DNA of 64,000 nucleotides, from assembly GCA_053919585.1 (NCBI GenBank), contig CM132814.1. One strand, written 5' to 3'. The stretch comes from Euprymna scolopes (Eukaryota). How positions within the stretch are numbered: the first letter of the stretch is position 1; the number at the start of each line of letters is the position of its first letter. The position numbers and the translations under genes are program-made. The notes beneath the pieces were generated by a model. It worked only from the letters and a program-made list of their open reading frames with translations, was not told the DNA's origin and made no database searches. Below are positions 13,585 through 48,974 of this stretch, in pieces.

Positions 13585-13745
13585 TTTTCTTACGTTCCTG
13601 ATTTTTTAAATAAAGATTGATTATTCGTATTATTTGGAATCTTCGAACTGCTGATCTCATCTTGAGTATCATTTGCACATTCTTCTGGTGCATCCTGTCG
13701 AACTCGGGATGATATTACTTTTACAATTGATTTTTCCAAGTACTT
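13585..13745 (-). mobile_element. Internally deleted P1 copy
   Basis: Reverse complement aligns to 14082-14115 and 14235-14370; HHR core deleted. Confidence 0.65.
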
Positions 13746-14081
13746 TACTTGCAGACCTTCCTGAAGATTAAAGGTTCAATTTCTAGTGTGGGCGACCGAA
13801 AAATACAATTGCGAATTACTTGGGGCCTCTACTTAGTCATGGCATGATATGAGTGCAATATAGTAAACCTTACATCTAGAATTCGTATTCCTATTTTTCT
13901 TAAACTCCATTACATGAGTTTTATTCTAGAAAATGTCTGGAAATTAACGCTTAACTTAAAGGGGGGTAGAAAGCGAATTAAAATTTAATGATTGGTTTTT
14001 CTGAATTTTTTAAATGAGGATTGGTTATTCTATTATTTGGATTCATTTGTTCTCATCGGACCCGTGGCACAGTAGTTAGAG

Positions 14082-14385
14082 TACTTGGAAAAGCAATAGT
14101 GAAAGTAATATTCTCTTAAAGGTACAGTTCTTGCGAATTATTTAAGACCTATATCCAGTCATGGCTGATGGAACAAAAGCATACTACCCCCGTTAAGTAA
14201 ATAAAGGGTTTCGTTCGAAATTCCGTCCAAATTTCCGAGTTCGACAGAAACATTCCAGAGTTTGACAAAATGCACCTGAAAAAGATCAGAGGTTACATCG
14301 ACCGAAACGTTATGAAAATCACATTCAGGATGAGAACAGTAGTCCGATGAATCCAAATAATATGAATTTTTTACAGGAAATTAAA
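14082..14385 (+). mobile_element. P1 PLE-terminal repeat copy with degenerate HHR at 14273-14314
   Basis: CAC-CTGAAAA-A-GATC...GACC-GAAACGTT-ATG preceded by 2-3 units like CCGAGTTCGACA. Confidence 0.7.
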
Positions 14386-14388
14386 ATA

Positions 14389-15050
14389 CTAGCTATATAT
14401 ACCCGGCGTTGTCAGTAAAAATAAATATTGCTAGGTGAAGGGTTTAGTCACATACTGTTTAAGATACACCGAATTTCCTAACTTGTTACGATTTTCTTTC
14501 AAGTGAACCACATAGTGGATTTATAGAAGCATAAAATGCATCCATGTTTATCTATGAAAATTAAACGGAGAAATAACTCAAGGGAAATAACTCTATATAG
14601 CTTAAATAAATAAACTCACTTCCGTTTTTCAAACACAACTGATGTCGGCTAAAAATAATGAAAATTAAATTAAATTAAAAAAAATTAAATTTAAAAATAA
14701 TACACAAATCAGCTTAAAATAATATTTATAAATAGAAGAATTAAAACAATTCTATTACTAATAGCCATTAATAGCATGGATCTTATCATTAAAATAGAAT
14801 TTCTTTAAATAGTATAGAAATCATGCTGGGGTCAAAGTCCGTTTTCAGAATGAACAATAACTTGTGAAACTGTATATTATGCACAGTATAATCAACTTGT
14901 TGTTTGTTTTTCAACAATGAACGGAACGCAACATAATTTATTTTAATAATGTACATATTTTTTTCTTTTTAAATCTCTCGATACAGCTTTGAAAATGCAA
15001 GGGCGAAACCGATCAGCTAACCCTCTCCTTTATTTTTCTTTACTATATAT
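14389..15050 (-). mobile_element. Possible non-autonomous Helitron
   Basis: CTAG next to a CCCGGCGTTG half-hairpin at the left end; other boundary uncertain. Confidence 0.3.
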
Positions 15051-23035: not shown

Positions 23036-24048
23036 TATATATATATAAAACATTTATTTAGAGAGTACGTAGATTAAATATCTAAAAAAACTATAAGGAT
23101 ATAAAAGGCATATTGATATGTATATATAATCTTTGATATCAAAGTTTAATTTGATAAATTAGCGATAAAATCACTTTCAGATTGCATTCAAATATTTATG
23201 AAACGTGCACAGAGATGCAATACTGCGGCAATGCGACACGAGTTGGAGCTTGGTTTTAAAAAAGTGGGACCTCTCCAACAACTAACGCCTGAGAATCCCT
23301 CGTTTAAACTCAAATACCGCTCNNNNNNNNNNNNNNNNNNNNNNNNNNNNNNNNNNNNNNNNNNNNNNNNNNNNNNNNNNNNNNNNNNNNNNNNNNNNNN
23401 NNNNNNNNNNNNNNNNNNNNNNNNNNNNNNNNNNNNNNNNNNNNNNNNNNNNNNNNNNNNNNNNNNNNNNNNNNTAGAAAGTACGTAAATTAAATATCTC
23501 AAAAATTATTAAGGATTTAAAAAGCATATTGATATGTATATAATCTTTGATATTAAAGTTTAATTTGATAGATTAGCGTTAAAATCACTTTCATTTAACA
23601 TATATAGAATCTTTTCATCAGCCCGTCAGTCTCTTAAACTGGTTATAAAAAGAAAAAAGTATAATTTGCATTAAGAATAAAATAATAAATAAGATTATAA
23701 AGTATAGGGACCGTTTTTATGGCATTTAACCCGGTTAAGAATGTTTTAAGGGGTCAAAAATAGGTCAAAATTGAAAAAATCGTTAAACATTTTGTACATT
23801 CATCTTAGTTTATTTTTAATTTTTAATCAGTTTATATGCGTGTCACGTTGGTACAGTGGTAACGTAACCAGCTTTGAATGCTACAGTTTTGCTTTCAGTT
23901 TCGATTCTAGCTGATGGCACTCACGTATTTTTTTATTTATGAAATCACGACTCTTTTAATAATATATATGAAATCTGGACAAATTAAAATATTATATTAA
24001 GCGTATTTCACAACCCGGCGAATCCGGGCAAAGCCGCCCCCTACCAGT
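23036..24048 (+). mobile_element. Probable Helitron-like element with an internal ~120-bp direct repeat (23058-23179 and 23475-23593)
   Basis: CCCGGCGAATCCGGG hairpin near the end, CCAG instead of CTAG; spans a gap. Confidence 0.4.
23840..23920 (+). pseudogene. tRNA-derived sequence (SINE head or tRNA pseudogene)
   Basis: A-box-like TGGTACAGTGG, B-box-like GTTTCGATTC, ends GTGTCA/TGGCAC can pair. Confidence 0.45.
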
Positions 24049-30514: not shown

Positions 30515-31939
30515 TAAATCAAATATTATAACGTAAAAGATGGTCACACACATTTTGAAGACACTTATGTTCGAATAAAATTTAAATGAGAAATTTGAAA
30601 ACTTTGAAGTGTCAGATAAATGATAAAATCATTTTTTTATTTACTTTTTTTGATATTTTCATTTAATCTCTAAAAAGATGGAATAATAAACTTTAAAATA
30701 TTTATTATTATGATGTATTTTATTTTTCGTGAATACTCGGATTTTATTTAAGCGATATGTACTAGGAGTGACACCGATACCGTAGTAAAAATCCGAATTT
30801 ATTTGGTATTTAAGCTGGAATGATCAACAAAATACAAAATGTTAAAGAAAAATATTTTCTTGTGGTAAATTTTGACATTATTTTGCAACTTTCTTCAAAT
30901 GCCATTTTGTACACTTCNNNNNNNNNNNNNNNNNNNNNNNNNNNNNNNNNNNNNNNNNNNNNNNNNNNNNNNNNNNNNNNNNNNNNNNNNNNNNNNNNNN
31001 NNNNNNNNNNNNNNNNNNNNNNNNNNNNNNNNNNNNNNNNNNNNNNNNNNNNNNNNNNNNNNNNNNNNNNNNNNNNNNNNNNNNNNNNNNNNNNNNNNNN
31101 NNNNNNNNNNNNNNNNNNNNNNNNNNNNNNNNNNNNNNNNNNNNNNNNNNNNNNNNNNNNNNNNNNNNNNNNNNNNNNNNNNNNNNNNNNNNNNNNNNNN
31201 NNNNNNNNNNNNNNNNNNNNNNNNNNNNNNNNNNNNNNNNNNNNNNNNNNNNNNNNNNNNNNNNNNNNNNNNNNNNNNNNNNNNNAGTTTATTGGTTTTG
31301 TTCAGAACGCGTGTTTCCATTTAAGTTTTTATAACAATGGAATTGAGATGAACTTTAAATATGGCGTTCATCATGCCTGTCTATTTGTATCATTGGCATT
31401 CAGCCAACTACTAATACCAAAGATGTCTGACTTTTGACGACGGTTTAATGATAAAGATAAAACTCAATGTTGCTCATTCTATAGACTGACACCACATGAC
31501 AATATCAGCTGTTTTCTGAAAATGAATTCCGCTGGGCGTTTTGCAGTTCAATGCTNNNNNNNNNNNNNNNNNNNNNNNNNNNNNNNNNNNNNNNNNNNNN
31601 NNNNNNNNNNNNNNNNNNNNNNNNNNNNNNNNNNNNNNNNNNNNNNNNNNNNNNNNNNNNNNNNNNNNNNNNNNNNNNNNNNNNNNNNNNNNNNGATTGT
31701 GTGGCTGAATCTATTCAATTTGCAGTATTTGTTGAAGGTTGTGTGTTAGAATGTGCGTTTATTTCTAAAAGAAAATGCCTAGCAATATAACAAATGATAT
31801 GATGAATTCGGTTGAAATGGCGGCGTAAGAATATAAAAAAGAGATTTGTAAGATATGGAAGGTGAAAAGAAAATAATAGATGTTTTAGGAACGATGAGAA
31901 TTGTTTTGTTTTTTTCAAGTGAACGTGAGGGAGAGAGGA

Positions 31940-33301: not shown

Positions 33302-33659
33302 NNNNNNNNNNNNNNNNNNNNNNNNNNNNNNNNNNNNNNNNNNNNNNNNNNNNNNNNNNNNNNNNNNNNNNNNNNNNNNNNNNNNNNNNNNNNNNNNNNN
33401 NNNNNNNNNNNNNNNNNNNNNNNNNNNNNNNNNNNNNNNNNNNNNNNNNNNNNNNNNNNNNNNNNNNNNNNNNNNNNNNNNNNNNNNNNNNNNNNNNNNN
33501 NNNNNCATTATTGAATTTGAGGACTTTTTTTTATGTCCTCAATTTCAATAATTTCAAGAACAAAGAATTAATAAAACATATTAAAAAACACTTTAAGAAG
33601 AGTTAAAAACATATTTAATTTTCAAAAAGGAAACCCAAATTAAATAAATTATCCTTAAT

Positions 33660-33705
33660 CCGCAGAATTTCGAAAGAAATACTTTCTTTCTCATCAGAGG
33701 GCAGG
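33660..33705 (-). ncRNA. Minimal HHR-like motif
   Basis: CTGATGA-GAAAGAAA(GTA)TTTCTTTC-GAAA-TTC; perfect 8-bp stem II, poor stem I. Confidence 0.55.
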
Positions 33706-34188: not shown

Positions 34189-34299
34189 ACTGTCAACACG
34201 ACGGTTCTAGGTTCAATCCTTGGCTTGGGAGAGATGCTAGTCTAGCGGAACTGATGAGTTGTGATACAACGAAACAGGACTGTATGTCGATGACTACAA
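34185..34299 (+). mobile_element. tRNA-like (B-box) SINE fragment carrying a type I hammerhead ribozyme
   Basis: GGTTCAATCC at 34210-34219 followed by an HHR; (TA)n on both sides. Confidence 0.7.
34238..34296 (+). ncRNA. Type I hammerhead ribozyme
   Basis: Core CTGATGA 34251-34257, stem II GTTGT/ACAAC, GAAA, stem III ACAG/CTGT, GUA site at 34284, stem I TAGTC/GACTA plus CGGAA/TGTCG (one mismatch). Confidence 0.8.
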
Positions 34300-37576: not shown

Positions 37577-38425
37577 AGGAAATGGCAGAAACACTAGAGG
37601 AAGACTTCCAATCTGCAGTGCAATAGGGAAAAATAGATGATCACATTCAATGCTGTCAAAACTAAGCTTGTTTCCTTCAATAATTACAAGAAACCTTCTC
37701 AGCCTCTAATAGCTATGGCCAAACATACATTACCTGAAAGTACTTCTTTCAAACTCCTCGGCTTAGCGTTCACATGAAACGTGAGTTGGAACAGATACAT
37801 GAGAACATTGCCATGGTCGCTGCGAGGAAGGTGGGCTCCCTCCATTGTGCTAGAAACTTACTTACGCCTGAAAGTATCCTGTACCTCTACAAGAACACCA
37901 CTCGTCCATATATAGATTATTGTTGTCACATTTGGACCGGTGCATCTGCTACGGGTCTCTCGCTCCTGGACAGGATTCAAAAGAGAGTCGCCAACCTGAT
38001 AGGTCCTGAACTGTCATATAAGCTTCAGTCTCTGTCCCATCGACGAAATGTTTCATCCCTTTGTCTATTCTACAAGTATTTTAATGATTGATGCTCTGAG
38101 GAACTACAAAATTTATACCCCCTGGACGTAAATACTCCCGACAAACCCGACAAGCAGCAAAATCCCACCCCTACACAGTTGAGATCCCTAGATGTAAGAA
38201 AGCCTTCTACTCTAATAGTTTCTTCCTCAGAACTGCTAGACTTTAGAACTCCATTCCGGGTTCCTGCTTTCCCAACTGTACTAACATGCAGAAGTTCAAA
38301 TGTAATGTGAACAAATATTTTGCTGCTCAACTCCCTACATAGGATCCCTGCAACATTTCCATGATAGTACACCCCTTCATTAAAGTGATGCTGTGCCTTG
38401 TTTGGAGTGAAAACTGAATTCTTAA
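37577..38425 (+). mobile_element. LINE family A 3' fragment
   Basis: Colinear with 12690-13530; YCCHIW...LSHRRNVSSLCLFYKYF. Confidence 0.9.
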
Positions 38426-40284
38426 AACATTTATTTAAAAGTATATTTTTAAAAGAATTTAAGTTACTTAAACCAAATTATATGACATTACAGACTTAAT
38501 GTATATTAAGTTTATGTTATATAAAAGTACATAGCATTTATTATTCAAATTTTTTATATGCCTGGTAAGTACCATGGATTAAAATAAAGCCAATTATTGA
38601 AGTTGTGAAATTAGAAGTTATGGTTCAAGCGCTTTTATATAATAGAAAACCCCTATCAATTTAATCAATGTCGGCGTTTTATCGTAATATGTATGTGGTT
38701 GCGTAGCTCATTGACGGCGAAACAAACATATTTGCAGTTTATAATAATCTAAGTACTACACAAAACTCAATATATATACATATATGAAAAAGAGAGATAG
38801 ACAATGGTCATCAATTTACAAGTGTTTCGGTGTAATCACAGATAATCAGTGTGGATAAACATTACAAAGCTTGAATCCACAGCAACATTGCATGGAGTCG
38901 GATACTTCCTTCGAATATGTGATGTATTTAAATAAATAATTTTAATATTTTTTTATGGTTGTTTTAAGCGATCATGAATACTATAAAGACAATCTTACAA
39001 TATTCAATTCTTAAGTGTTCTTAAGTGTTTTCTTTTTGTAAGAGTTTACTCGCTTACATGATTTTGGAACACTTTTACACTTTTAGGGACGCATATCGTT
39101 ATATTTATTTATATATATAATGTATATCCACGTACACGTGTTTCACTGTATCTACAGATCATTAGCGTGGCTGACAATGACAAGGCTCCACCTCACCTGA
39201 ACATTTTGGATAGTAGTAGACGGTAGCGGTGCGATACACTCTTAAAACTATAGAGGATGGCAAAATATACTTTGAAATAAAACAAATAATATGCGTATTT
39301 ATATTTTCACATTTAAAATTAGAAATATTTATATAAGATGGTTTAATAGATTTTTGATCGCAAGTATACATATATTCACAGTATTTCTTATTTATGTTTG
39401 ATTAAAGAGTTAAAAAGGCGAATTTGTTGAATTTGTTCATACGCTACCTTTCGTGTCCGCCATAGCGTGAAACGCCTCAGGCAAACCACGTATACATTCA
39501 TACGGATAGCCGACGCACTGAGTAACATTTTACACGCCGTCCGTCATTTTCAATCCATGCACTTTACTCTTCCCCGCCCTCTTTACTGCCTGCAATACGA
39601 CATAATCGCACAAATGCAGGGGTTTGCCGGGCAAAAGTGGATAATTGTGAATATGATTTGCGATACGTTGCCATTAGTCAAGTGTAGCCTATGGTTGCCT
39701 TAAACTGCCACCCACTCAGTGCCCGATTGTCCAGCTCCTGTGCGACAGGAAAGCACGAATATAACGGACTCTGAAACTGGACACTCGAATACACTTTATC
39801 ACTAAGGGAATTTGGATAACCGAGGAGGTTATCCGGCTTTTACCATAGTGATCATTGATCAATTAGGAAAATGGAAGGGTTTTTGGAGGAGGGCAGTGGG
39901 TGATGATGGACGGTTAGTTGTTCTGAAGCGGAAAATAACAAGAAAAGAGTGATAGCTAGAGGAATTATGAAGAAGGAAAAGATGGGAGAAATTAATAAAG
40001 GCTAATGGTCAGAAAAGAAGCTATCTAGATTTAATTAAATAATATTACAAATAAAGAATATTTAAATAGAAGGAATGAAAATGTAAGAAAGTGTATGGAA
40101 GACAAAGATGAAATTTTGGAAGAAAGAGAATCAGAAAATCTAGAAAAAGAGAGGAAGATGCTAAAGGAGAAAAAGAGTAACAGAAAACAAAACTACTTTA
40201 AAAATGGAAAAAATATGCGATTATTTGCGTTATTCGGACTATCTTAATAATAACTGATAATAATAATAAACCAAGAAATAATGA

Positions 40285-40422
40285 TGGTTATGTTTCTGAA
40301 TTTTGTTAGATGAGTCTTGATAATTCGGATTATATAAATTATTAAAACGACTGTTCACACTTTGCGTGTTATTCAAACAAAGTTTTACCCGATTTAACCT
40401 TCAAGCTTCTTCACATCTATCC
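40285..40422 (-). mobile_element. P1 copy (degenerate HHR and tail) abutting the satellite
   Basis: Reverse complement aligns to 14265-14385 and 13585-13700. Confidence 0.55.
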
Positions 40423-42182
40423 TGTCGAACTCGGTAAATTTTTGTCGAATTCGGTAATCTTTTTGTCGAACTCGGTAATCTTTTTGTCGAACCCGGTAAT
40501 CTTTTTGTCGAACCCGGTAATCTTTTTGTCGAACTCGGTAAATTTTTGTCGAACTCGGTAATCTTTTTGTCGAATTCGGTAATCTTTTTGTCGAATTCGG
40601 TAATCTTTTTGTCGAACCCGGTAATCTTTTTGTCGAACCCGGTAATCTTTTTGTCGAACTCGGTAAATTTTTGTCGAACTCGGTAAATTTTTGTCGAACT
40701 CGGTAATCTTTTTGTTGAACTCGGTAATCTTTTTGTCGAACTCGGTAAATTTTTGTCGAACTCGGTAAATTTTTGTCGAACTCGGTAAATTTTTGTCGAA
40801 CTCGGTAATCTTTTTGTCGAACTCGGTAAATTTTTGTCGAACTCGGTAAATTTTTGTCGAACTCGGTAAATTTTTGTCGAACTCGGTAAATTTTTGTCGA
40901 ATTCGGTAATCTTTTTGTCGAACTCGGTAAATTTTTGTCGAACTCGGTAAATTTTTGTCGAACTCGGTAAATTTTTGTCGAAATCGGTAATCTTTTTGTC
41001 AAACTCGGTAAATTTTTGTCGAACTCGGTAAATTTTTGTCGAATTCGGTAATTTTTTGTCGAACTCGGTAAATTTTTGTCGAACTCGGTAAATTTTTGTC
41101 GAACTCGGTAAATTTTTGTCGAACTCGGTAATCTTTTTGTCGAACTCGGTAAATTTTTGTCGAACTCGGTAATCTTTTTGTCGAACTCGGTAAATTTTTG
41201 TCGAACTCGGTAATCTTTTTGTCGAACTCGGTAAATTTTTGTCGAACTCGGTAAATTTTTGTCGAACTCGGTAATCTTTTTGTCGAACTCGGTAAATTTT
41301 TGTCGAATTCGGTAAATTTTTGTCGAACTCGGTAAATTTTTGTCGAACTCGGTAATCTTTTCGTCGAACTCGGTAAATTTTTGTCGAACTCGGTAAATTT
41401 TTGTCGAATTCGGTAATTTTTTGTCGAAATCGGTAAATTTTTGTCGAACTCGGTAAATTTTTGTCGAACTCGGTAATCTTTTTGTTGAACTCGGTAATCT
41501 TTTTGTCGAACTCGGTAAATTTTTGTCGAACTCGGTAAATTTTTGTCGAACTCGGTAAATTTTTGTCGAACTCGGTAATCTTTTTGTCGAACTCGGTAAA
41601 TTTTTGTCGAACTCGGTAAATTTTTGTCGAACTCGGTAAATTTTTGTCGAATTCGGTAATCTTTTTGTCGAACTCGGTAAATTTTTGTCGAACTCGGTAA
41701 ATTTTTGTCGAACTCGGTAAATTTTTGTCGAACTCGGTAAATTTTTGTCGAAATCGGTAATCTTTTTGTCAAACTCGGTAAATTTTTGTCGAACTCGGTA
41801 AATTTTTGTCGAATTCGGTAATTTTTTGTCGAAATCGGTAAATTTTTGTCGAACTCGGTAAATTTTTGTCGAACTCGGTAAATTTTTGTCGAACTCGGTA
41901 ATCTTTTTGTCGAACTCGGTAAATTTTTGTCGAACTCGGTAATCTTTTTGTCGAACTCGGTAATCTTTTTGTCGAACTCGGTAATCTTTTTGTCGAACTC
42001 GGTAAATTTCTGTCGAACTCGGTAAATTTTTGTCGAACTCGGTAATCTTTTTGTCGAACTCGGTAAATTTTTGTCGAACTCGGTAATCTTTTTGTCGAAC
42101 TCGGTAATCTTTTTGTCGAATTCGGTAAATTTTTGACGAACTTGGTCATTTTTTGTCGATCTTGGTGATCTTTTTTCCTAAC
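40423..42182. repeat. 20/21-bp tandem satellite (TGTCGAACTCGGTAAATTTT / TGTCGAACTCGGTAATCTTTT), roughly 85 units
   Basis: Direct reading; runs into a gap at 42183. Confidence 0.97.
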
Positions 42183-42488
42183 NNNNNNNNNNNNNNNNNN
42201 NNNNNNNNNNNNNNNNNNNNNNNNNNNNNNNNNNNNNNNNNNNNNNNNNNNNNNNNNNNNNNNNNNNNNNNNNNNNNNNNNNNNNNNNNNNNNNNNNNNN
42301 NNNNNNNNNNNNNNNNNNNNNNNNNNNNNNNNNNACTGTCTAGAATGACACACCATAGAAAAAGGAACACTGCGGACAGACATTAAGCATGAACGTTTTT
42401 TACTAATAAGCATAAGATTTAATTACAATTCGTTAATTGTTACATTTTCTCCGTTTCGGTTTACTCTCCCACTTACGTCATTTTTAGT

Positions 42489-47163: not shown

Positions 47164-48071
47164 CTAGCATTTCAGTCCGGCGTTGCCCGGGTGTTTGGAG
47201 GTGTATGTTGAGCAAAAAAAAAAGGTGGTAGTAGGAAGGCAGGCTCGAGCCCGTACCGCAACGGAGGAAAAGAACGGGAAATAACCTGACGTCTTTGCTG
47301 TTACGACCACCGCTAAACCAGTAGTGACGTAGGTTAAAATTAAGGCTAGACAATCGAAAGGAGAGGATGACTATCAAAAATATCGGCGAAAAAAGCGACC
47401 CCCCCCCTGTAGAAAGGGCCCAGTTGAAGGTGAAGATATTAATGTTTTTAGCCAATTTTTCGATATTTGTCGTCTGAAAGGTCGAACTTCAAGATGATAC
47501 TGATCTCGTAAAAATCCATCGCCTCTATGGACAGTTTTAAGCAGACATAAAAGCATACATGCATACATTTATATATTAGTAACTAAAAATTTTCGACCCA
47601 AACCGATTAAAAAGCTTGCCATATCTCTGAATACCCTTTATGTAAAATTTCAAATGTTTAAACCAGAAATTGTCTTTAGTAATTTGGTAGAGACCGCATA
47701 GGTCAATTTTTTTAAACTTTGATCCCTATTATGTCCTCTTAACATTCATTGGTCCAGGCTCAAATCAAGTTATTAAGTTAGATCTATGTCCAAAGAACCT
47801 ATATCTAAAATTTCAAGTGTGTAGACCCCAAATTGTCGGAGGAGATTGGTAGAGTTCGTTGAACTTATACCCCTTCATCGCCACATTTCTGGCCGAAAAC
47901 CGATCACATAGATTTTCCCAAATGTCAGTACCCTGTATATCAAATTTCGAGTCTGTAGACTAAAAATTGACAGATTTATTGCGTAGGGAAATGTACACAG
48001 ACACACAGACAGACAGATAGACACACAAACACACAGACACGTTCAGTTTTATAGATATATAGATAGATAGA
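47164..48071 (-). mobile_element. Helitron family A, tandem unit 1 (full length)
   Basis: Colinear with 35942-36851. Confidence 0.88.
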
Positions 48072-48515
48072 CTAGCATTTCGGTCCGGCGTTGTCTGGGT
48101 GTTTGGAGGTGTATGCTGAGCAAAAAAAAAGGCCAATTTTTTTTAAATTTGGCCCCTATTATGACCCCTTAACATTTATTGTTTTGGGCTCAGATTGAGT
48201 TATCAAGTTAGATCCATGTCCAAGGTACCTATATCTAAAATTTTAATTGTTTAGACCAAAAATTGTCGGAGGGGTTTGGTAGAGTTTTCAAAGGTCTATT
48301 CGTTGAACTTTGACCCCTTCATAGCCAAATTTCTGGCCGAAAACCGATCACATAGATTTTCCCAAATCTCAGTACCCTGTATATCAAATTTCTATTCTGT
48401 AGACTGAAAATTAACAGAGTTATTGTGAAGGAAAATGTACACAGATACACAGACAGTCAGACAGACACACACACACACACACACACAGATACGTTCACTT
48501 TTATAGATATATAGA
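48072..48515 (-). mobile_element. Helitron family A, tandem unit 2 (internally deleted)
   Basis: Both termini present, about 480 bp missing. Confidence 0.85.
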
Positions 48516-48840
48516 CTAGCATTTCGGGCCGGCGTTGCCCGTGTGTTTAGAGGTGTATGCTGAGCAAAAAAGAAAAAAAACGGTAATCTTTTTAACTTGT
48601 ACCCCTATTATGACCCCTTATAATTTATTGATTTGGGCTCAAATAAAGTTATATCCATGTCCAAGGAACCTATATCTAAAATTTCAATTGTTAAGACAAA
48701 AAAATTGTCCGAGGAGTTTGGTAGAGTTTAATCTTAATCGCCAAATTTCTGGCCGAAAACGAATCACATCGATTTTCCCAAACTTCAGTGCCCTGTATAT
48801 CAAATTTCTAGTCTGTAGACTAAAAATTGACAGAGTTATT
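48516..48840 (-). mobile_element. Helitron family A, tandem unit 3 (same deletion, runs into gap)
   Basis: CTAG terminus and hairpin; colinear with unit 2. Confidence 0.8.
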
Positions 48841-48974
48841 NNNNNNNNNNNNNNNNNNNNNNNNNNNNNNNNNNNNNNNNNNNNNNNNNNNNNNNNNNNN
48901 NNNNNNNNNNNNNNNNNNNNNNNNNNNNNNNNNNNNNNNNNNNNNNNNNNNNNNNNNNNNNNNNNNNNNNNNNN

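What the first reader, a model, noticed from the sequence alone, without database searches (positions are those of the whole stretch)
40285..42182. Satellite amplified from the unit immediately upstream of a hammerhead in a dispersed PLE-terminal family
Seen: the array begins ATCCTGTCGAACTCGG (40419-40434), identical to 13692-13707. Its left flank aligns to P1 copies at 13585-13745, 14082-14385 and 6100-6720. The 14082 copy carries 2-3 degenerate units just before CTGAA.A...GAAACGTT, and the 6100 copy about two. Here that unit is expanded about 85-fold while the adjacent HHR is decayed. Inference: a satellite born inside a PLE terminus, by slippage or repeated reverse-transcriptase template jumping.
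Basis: partly seen in the sequence, partly recalled or inferred. Interest (0 to 1): 0.72.

Follow-up and report, generated by a model that had tools for sequence, protein, structure and literature searches.

The report
Minisatellite grown inside a SINE copy
A 1.7-kb run of about 86 copies of a 20/21-base unit has grown out of a two-unit internal repeat of one old copy of a very abundant short retroelement, and the same growth has happened at dozens of other copies in this genome, so it is an ordinary transposon-seeded minisatellite.

Summary
Window 40423-42166 is a head-to-tail array of 86 units of 20 or 21 bp. It runs into a stretch of N. Its left flank (40290-40422) is the tail of a dispersed repeat family.

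The interpretation needs correcting in four ways.
- The family is a roughly 373-bp non-coding, SINE-like element with at least 27,000 copies. It has box A/B-like motifs at the head, two tandem 21-bp units, then a minimal hammerhead-like motif. No Penelope-like element (PLE) terminus was shown, although half of the copies carry a PLE-like inverted 5' arm.
- Rfam models do not recognise the hammerhead. It only fits the published "min-HHR" description.
- The array is not a one-off. At least 31 other loci hold arrays of ten or more units, and at least 43 more hold three or more. All six that I could read sit at the same place in the element.
- Growth happened in place, long after insertion. Each locus has its own unit variants. 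A 19-unit block is duplicated 770 bp along the array. The units are 92% alike, but the flank is only 79% like its subfamily consensus. Reverse-transcriptase (RT) template jumping is not needed to explain this.

The scan has already noted this SINE family (s1-244842, s1-279844) and another SINE-derived minisatellite (s1-275137) on other DNA of this genome. This is a known kind of thing, of modest interest.

The parts
40423..42166 (-). Array of 86 units. The core is CCGAGTTCGACA when read on the minus strand. There are 54 units of 20 bp and 31 of 21 bp, in 14 variants. The units become degenerate towards 42166-42182.
   Evidence: TRF; core matches; unit typing
40290..42182 (-). The whole SINE remnant that holds the array: tail, array and degenerate last units. 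The head and body are not visible, being either inside the N run or lost.
40290..40422 (-). Tail of the SINE-like element (element positions about 240-373), from just after the last unit core to the element's 3' end (..TTCAGAAACAT). It is 79% identical to the older subfamily's consensus.
40382..40414 (-). Decayed copy of the hammerhead-like motif. The family has CTGAAGA, one extra A, GGTCG..CGACC, then GAAAC. Here the first C, the G of GAAA and the helix II pairing are mutated.
   Evidence: alignment; coordinates
42183..42334 (.). Run of 152 N directly after the degenerate end of the array. It was neither filled nor looked up. No SINE body is found to its right, up to 43000.
14072..14367 (+). 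Ordinary copy of the same element (89% over 237 bp), with two units at 14233-14267 and the motif at 14276-14311. Part of the head region is deleted.
13998..14046 (-). Inverted partial tail (element positions 321-370), 26 bp 5' of the 14072 copy. This is the PLE-like inverted arm.
13592..13707 (-). Inverted partial tail arm reaching the last unit core (13696-13707). It holds the 16-mer shared with 40419-40434. It lies 5' of the fragment at 13759-13843 (+).
6166..6716 (+). Diverged copy of the element, split by about 290 bp of foreign sequence (6356-6644) inside the loop of the motif's helix II.

Best explanation
One old copy of a very abundant, roughly 373-bp non-coding SINE-like retroelement lies on the minus strand here. 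The element normally carries two adjacent 21-bp units (core CCGAGTTCGACA) just 5' of a minimal hammerhead-like motif. Two adjacent near-identical units can mispair, either during replication or between sister chromatids. That first gave three units and then, by repeated unequal exchange of single units and of multi-unit blocks, about 86. The process ran in place, long after the element had inserted, and it has run independently at dozens of other copies of the same family. What is shown: the origin of the unit, the position of the array within the element, the recurrence at other loci, the block duplication, and the age gap between array and flank. What is inferred: the molecular process itself (slipped-strand mispairing followed by unequal exchange or gene conversion). 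No function is implied.
For: Unit origin and register. The family consensus has two units followed by the CTGAAGA..GAAACGTT motif. In the window and in six other array loci, the array sits between the element's body and the last unit plus tail. The tail is present in 7 of 7, and the body in 4 of the 6 others, with a short partial body in a fifth (L094).

Recurrence.
- A 200-bp piece of the array finds full-length matches of 79-87% at 31 other loci.
- A three-unit pattern has 1,184 matches and 0 in the control, at 43 or more further loci in the first 100 rows.
- The six arrays I read have 30-52 units each.

Independence of the loci. The dominant unit variants are specific to each locus. The window shares no variant with the other six, and the outer flanks are unrelated. 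The exact 20-bp-period dimer occurs almost only here, in 50 of 52 matches.

Growth in place after insertion.
- A run of about 19 units with the same rare variants in nearly the same order recurs 38 units (770 bp) later. 200-bp pieces of the array are 98-99% alike.
- The units match 92%, but the tail is only 79% like its subfamily consensus. In L091 the figures are 97% against 85%.

Normal state of the element. Of 83 unit clusters in 249 kb, 42 have one unit, 39 have two, one has three, and one is this array.

Age of the insertion. A contig of another organism label covers 39500-40465 with about 7% differences, so the element and its first units predate that split.

Precedent. 23% of human mini- and macrosatellites derive from transposable elements and expand locally (PMC3389668).
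Against: The right-hand junction cannot be seen, because the array ends in an N run, so it is not shown that this copy ever had a body or head. Only six of the other arrays could be read; the rest are known only by coordinates and alignment length. Many dispersed loci carry an exact three-unit form. Some changes in unit number may therefore have happened in source copies and spread by retrotransposition rather than in place. Homogeneity could also come from gene conversion without net growth. No population or long-read data show that the array length varies today.
Confidence: 0.85

Rival explanations
1. The array was made at the moment of retrotransposition. The reverse transcriptase (possibly of a Penelope-like element) repeatedly jumped back on the two-unit template, so the element arrived already expanded.
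For: The family shows PLE-like insertion scars: an inverted tail arm in 15 of 29 copies. PLE copies are known for partial tandem and inverted arrangements (PMC4209133, discussion). Exact three-unit forms occur at many dispersed loci.
Against: The units are far more alike (92%, with blocks at 98-99%) than the flank is to its consensus (79%). If all units dated from insertion, they should be about 60-65% alike. A 38-unit-period block duplication is not a unit-by-unit stutter. Each locus has its own variants. Ordinary copies almost never have more than two units.
Confidence: 0.07
2. A composite element with a pre-expanded internal repeat block (as in the human SVA element, SINE-VNTR-Alu) spread by transposition, so the arrays at different loci are copies of one expanded master.
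For: Arrays at L094, L095 and L096 share the ancestral unit form and a few variants. Three-unit copies are dispersed.
Against: The shared variants are the ancestral form or single CpG-type changes. Unit numbers (30-86), dominant variants and periods (20 against 21) differ by locus. The window's variants are found nowhere else.
Confidence: 0.05
3. The array is a selected functional element, for example a protein-binding or regulatory repeat, or a source of processed RNA linked to the ribozyme.
For: There is none directly. The same 12-nt core is kept in all arrays.
Against: The neighbouring motif is dead here. The units hold no ribozyme. The open reading frames through the array are only periodic artefacts. 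No run on record as RNA held the stretch. Arrays vary freely in length and spacer sequence.
Confidence: 0.03

Closest known systems
Transposable-element-derived minisatellites / VNTRs (for example Alu-, LTR- and SVA-derived tandem repeats in human; PMC3389668, and the review PMC6947457)
   Same: A short internal piece of a dispersed element is amplified head to tail inside individual copies. The same piece is hit at many loci, the rest of the element flanks the array, and growth is by local duplication.
   Different: Here the host element is a cephalopod-type SINE-like element with a hammerhead-like tail, and the seed is a two-unit repeat already present in the element's consensus. The share of copies affected was not measured genome-wide.
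Minimal hammerhead motifs (min-HHR) in the terminal repeats of Penelope-like elements (Cervera and de la Pena 2014, PMC4209133)
   Same: The family's motif has the CUGANGA box, one unpaired base before helix II, a helix II of 5-6 bp, GAAA, a short palindromic stand-in for helix III (ACGU), and a short helix I. Copies often lie in opposite orientation 100-700 bp apart.
   Different: Helix II is shorter than the 7-8 bp described there. Rfam models do not score the motif. Cleavage is untested. No coding PLE carrying the motif was found. The array units themselves hold no ribozyme.
Non-LTR retrozymes, tandem repeats derived from PLE termini (bioRxiv 10.64898/2026.07.22.740005)
   Same: Both are tandem repeats born from sequence next to a PLE-type hammerhead, with unequal crossover invoked as the mechanism.
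   Different: Retrozyme units are hundreds of bases long and each contains a hammerhead. Here the unit is 20-21 bp and lies outside the motif.
Another SINE-derived minisatellite in this same genome (scan note s1-275137)
   Same: About 77 copies of a 24-base piece of one old SINE copy. It was judged an ordinary transposon-derived minisatellite.
   Different: It involves a different piece (the head) and possibly a different SINE family. I did not check it.

Membership tests
Transposon-derived minisatellite | Head-to-tail units of about 10-100 bp | tested here: met
   Period 20/21, 85 copies, 92% matches
Transposon-derived minisatellite | The unit is homologous to an internal segment of a dispersed element | tested here: met
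   The unit equals the first of the two 21-bp units in the element consensus. The older subfamily has the very spacer seen in most arrays.
Transposon-derived minisatellite | The array is flanked in register by the remaining parts of the element | tested here: met
   Tail present in 7 of 7 loci; full body in 4 of the 6 other loci and a short partial body in one more. The window's body side is hidden by N.
Satellite DNA in the strict sense | Very long arrays (tens of kb or more) at few, often heterochromatic, sites | tested here: not met
   Arrays of 0.6-3.4 kb are scattered over most large contigs
Hammerhead ribozyme, type I (Rfam RF00163 and related models) | Scores above the family's covariance-model threshold | tested here: not met
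   No hit in the window or in 20 loci at the gathering score. No hit at E up to 10 on a near-consensus copy.
Minimal hammerhead of PLE terminal repeats (PMC4209133) | CUGANGA, a bulged base, helix II, GAAA, a palindromic mini helix III, a short helix I | tested here: met
   All are present in the consensus. The 52-nt segment's lowest-energy fold is helix I plus helix II with an open core. A core-plus-helix-II descriptor is expected 0.13 times per 64 kb. The 36-mer has 27,406 near matches.
Minimal hammerhead of PLE terminal repeats (PMC4209133) | Self-cleavage, usually as a dimer | not testable with these tools
   Needs an in vitro transcription and cleavage assay
Penelope-like element terminus | Forms the terminal repeat of an element that encodes RT and a GIY-YIG nuclease | not tested
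Only the inverted-arm scar was measured (15 of 29).
SINE | Head derived from a small RNA, with an internal Pol III promoter | tested here: inconclusive
   Box A-like and box B-like motifs are present. ARAGORN finds no tRNA in 29 loci, and Rfam finds none on a near-consensus copy.
SINE | Short, non-coding, very high copy number | tested here: met
   About 373 bp. 7,271 first-look candidates. 27,406 motif matches.
Ceph-SINE superfamily | Ceph domain; two signature strings are quoted in PMC5786205 | tested here: not met
   Neither string is in the element. This is a weak test, because the full domain sequence was not at hand.
Non-LTR retrozyme | Every tandem unit holds a type I hammerhead | tested here: not met
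   The units are 20-21 bp and lie outside the motif

The most novel reading that the evidence does not exclude
The 21-bp unit may be an intrinsic expansion hot spot tied to the biology of a Penelope-dependent SINE. It could be a site where the element's RNA or the partner's reverse transcriptase pairs or stalls. In that case this one family would seed a genome-wide set of minisatellites at far above the background rate, with some steps made during retrotransposition, as the dispersed exact three-unit copies hint.
Probability: 0.12. Interest if true: 0.55.

Novelty: new member of a known kind. Interest (0 to 1): 0.3.

Why it matters
The case shows in one locus, and with internal controls, how a pre-existing two-unit repeat inside a mobile element becomes a kilobase-scale minisatellite. 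It also shows that the same seed has fired many times in a large cephalopod-type genome. That is useful for repeat annotation, since these arrays should be masked as derived from the SINE. It is also useful as a set of natural replicates for measuring how the first steps of tandem-repeat growth depend on unit number. It does not change what is known about how satellites arise. The more unusual object is the host element, a SINE-like family with a Penelope-type hammerhead tail, which this scan has already reported elsewhere.

Tried and rejected
- Rfam on the window at gathering scores: no hammerhead and no tRNA.
- Rfam on 20 family loci at gathering scores: no hammerhead and no tRNA, only two 5S-like hits.
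- Rfam on a near-consensus copy at E up to 10: no hammerhead and no tRNA.
- ARAGORN on 29 loci: no tRNA.
- Folding 111 nt of the tail as a monomer: no better than shuffles, z = 0.11.
- Thirty locus slots were wasted on the array itself. Only six other arrays were read as a result.
- A search for a shared origin of the arrays through common outer flanks found none.
- Ceph-SINE membership was rejected on two signature strings.
- Literature searches for a described cephalopod satellite of this unit, or for a described Penelope-mobilised SINE, found nothing specific.
- The public runs are low-coverage contigs. They could not show array length or transcription.

Full report
WHAT IS THERE

Window 40423-42166 is a clean tandem array. 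TRF reports period 20 (with multiples 61 and 81), 85.3 copies and 92% matches. The 12-nt core occurs 86 times in the window, where chance would give 0.13. Typing the units gives 86 cores in 14 variants. Two dominate, one of 20 bp and one of 21 bp, differing only in the A/T-rich spacer. The last two units are degenerate, and the sequence then runs into 152 N (42183-42334). The window holds eight such N runs of 128-368 bp.

THE FAMILY

- The flank finds 39 other genomic places at 74-79% identity.
- The copy at 14082-14400 finds thousands of places: 7,271 first-look candidates, the best at 88-90% over about 237 bp.
- Aligning 30 copies extends the element on both sides. From head to 3' end, one near-consensus copy measures about 373 bp.

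The element's parts, in order, are:
- a head with box A-like and box B-like motifs;
- a body;
- two clear tandem 21-bp units with the core CCGAGTTCGACA, preceded by degenerate ones;
- a CTGAAGA box, one extra A, a 5-6 bp stem and GAAACGTT;
- about 90 more bases ending in ..TTCAGAAACGT.

The 36-nt motif alone has 27,406 matches at up to 3 mismatches in the 5.9-Gb assembly, and none in the reversed control.

The array reads on the strand opposite to the element. The tail therefore lies to its left (40290-40422), and the head should lie to its right. Nothing SINE-like is seen there beyond the N run.

IS IT A PENELOPE-LIKE ELEMENT (PLE) TERMINUS WITH A HAMMERHEAD?

No Rfam model recognises a hammerhead. 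This holds for the window, for 20 family loci at gathering scores, and for a near-consensus copy at E up to 10. ARAGORN finds no tRNA in 29 loci. A 111-nt fold of the tail is no better than shuffles.

The motif does match, feature by feature, the minimal hammerhead that Cervera and de la Pena described in PLE terminal repeats (PMC4209133):
- the CUGANGA box;
- an unpaired base at the 5' end of helix II;
- GAAA;
- a tiny palindromic stand-in for helix III (ACGU);
- a short helix I.

The isolated 52 nt fold, at minimum energy, into exactly helix I plus helix II with both core strands open. A descriptor of core plus helix II is expected only 0.13 times per 64 kb.

In 15 of 29 copies, an inverted partial tail sits within 100 bp 5' of the head. 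That scar is typical of PLE insertions and not of LINE-driven SINEs. The window shows it twice, at 13592-13707 and at 13998-14046.

So "PLE-type, hammerhead-like" is a fair description, but membership is not proven. No coding partner was examined and cleavage is untested. Two earlier notes of this scan reached the same reading on other DNA of this genome.

The element lacks two signature strings of the Ceph-SINE domain.

WHERE THE ARRAY COMES FROM

The array unit is the element's first 21-bp unit. The older subfamily, to which the window's tail is closest (79% against 72%), has the spacer GAAAGATTC. This is the spacer seen in most arrays elsewhere.

At the left junction, the last core is followed by the element's normal continuation into the motif. 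The motif is dead here: the first C of the box, the G of GAAA and the stem are all mutated.

IT IS NOT A ONE-OFF

The exact 20-bp-period dimer is private to this locus, with 50 of 52 matches. The unit family is not private.
- A 200-bp piece of the array aligns over its full length, at 79-87%, to 31 other loci on many contigs. Some of these span 1-8 kb.
- A three-unit pattern of one spacer variant has 1,184 matches at 43 or more further loci in the first hundred rows alone.

- They hold 30-52 units of 21 bp.
- All six have the element's last unit and tail on one side. Four have the body on the other side. A fifth has a short part of it. The sixth looks 5'-truncated, with an inverted arm.
- Their outer flanks are unrelated. 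Their dominant unit variants are locus-specific, and the window's variants occur in none of them.

In ordinary copies the unit number is one or two. Of 83 clusters in 249 kb, 42 have one unit, 39 have two, one has three, and one is this array.

HOW IT GREW

Three observations place the growth in situ and after insertion.
- A run of about 19 units carrying the same rare variants in almost the same order recurs 38 units (770 bp) further on. 200-bp pieces of the array are 98-99% identical to each other. This is the mark of unequal exchange of large blocks, not of unit-by-unit stutter.
- The units are 92% alike, but the adjoining tail is only 79% like its consensus. Units all made at insertion should by now be only about 60-65% alike. 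The same gap holds in L091 (97% against 85%).
- A contig from a differently labelled organism covers 39500-40465 with about 7% differences and ends in the first units. The element was therefore already there before that split.

The molecular steps are inferred from general knowledge of minisatellites (PMC3389668). These are mispairing of the two adjacent units, followed by unequal sister-chromatid exchange or gene conversion.

RT template jumping cannot be excluded for the very first extra unit. The dispersed exact three-unit copies suggest that some unit gains occurred in source copies. Template jumping does not explain the array as it stands.

SURROUNDINGS

The open reading frames through the array are periodic artefacts. 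No run on record as RNA held the stretch. A LINE-like RT C-terminal fragment lies at 37774-38091. Nothing suggests a gene or a function for the array.

VERDICT

The object is a transposon-seeded minisatellite, a well-known kind of thing, and it recurs many times from one SINE-like family. The host family is the more interesting object, and this scan has already noted it. Another SINE-derived minisatellite has also been noted in this genome.

Noticed in passing
window 34251-34274 (+) and 33668-33697 (-): Two clean CTGATGA, stem, GAAA motifs (helix II of 5 and 8 bp) were picked up by my core-plus-helix-II descriptor, against 0.13 expected by chance. Rfam gives no hit at the gathering score.
   Followed up: partly
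L039:2028-2144 (+) and L006:1-108 (-): 5S rRNA-like sequences (58 and 44 bits) lie next to copies of the SINE family. They could be 5S pseudogenes or a 5S-headed SINE.
   Followed up: no
window 6356-6644: About 290 bp of foreign sequence is inserted into the helix II loop of the hammerhead-like motif of an old SINE copy (6166-6716).
   Followed up: no
window 5027-5154, 23323-23474, 30918-31285, 31556-31694, 33302-33505, 42183-42334, 48841-48974, 56647-56942: There are eight N runs of 128-368 bp within 64 kb. Their varied lengths look more like masking than fixed-size scaffold gaps. None was filled.
   Followed up: no
window 37774-38091 (+): A 105-aa open reading frame resembles, from memory only, the conserved C-terminal region of non-LTR retrotransposon reverse transcriptases. 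It is probably a LINE fragment.
   Followed up: no
G000:C25:86082501-86090527 and G000:C28:96880523-96887268: Arrays of the same 21-bp unit recur at spacings of about 1.8 kb and about 2.9 kb. This suggests that a segment containing the array was itself tandemly duplicated. It is known only from coordinates.
   Followed up: no
window 47700-48840 and 55573-56637: There are other tandem arrays in the window: a 444-bp unit with 2.7 copies, and a 19-bp A/T-rich unit with 56 copies.
   Followed up: no
L060, minus strand, about 1967 from the reverse end: An ordinary young-subfamily SINE copy has three units instead of two. It is a one-step intermediate.
   Followed up: partly
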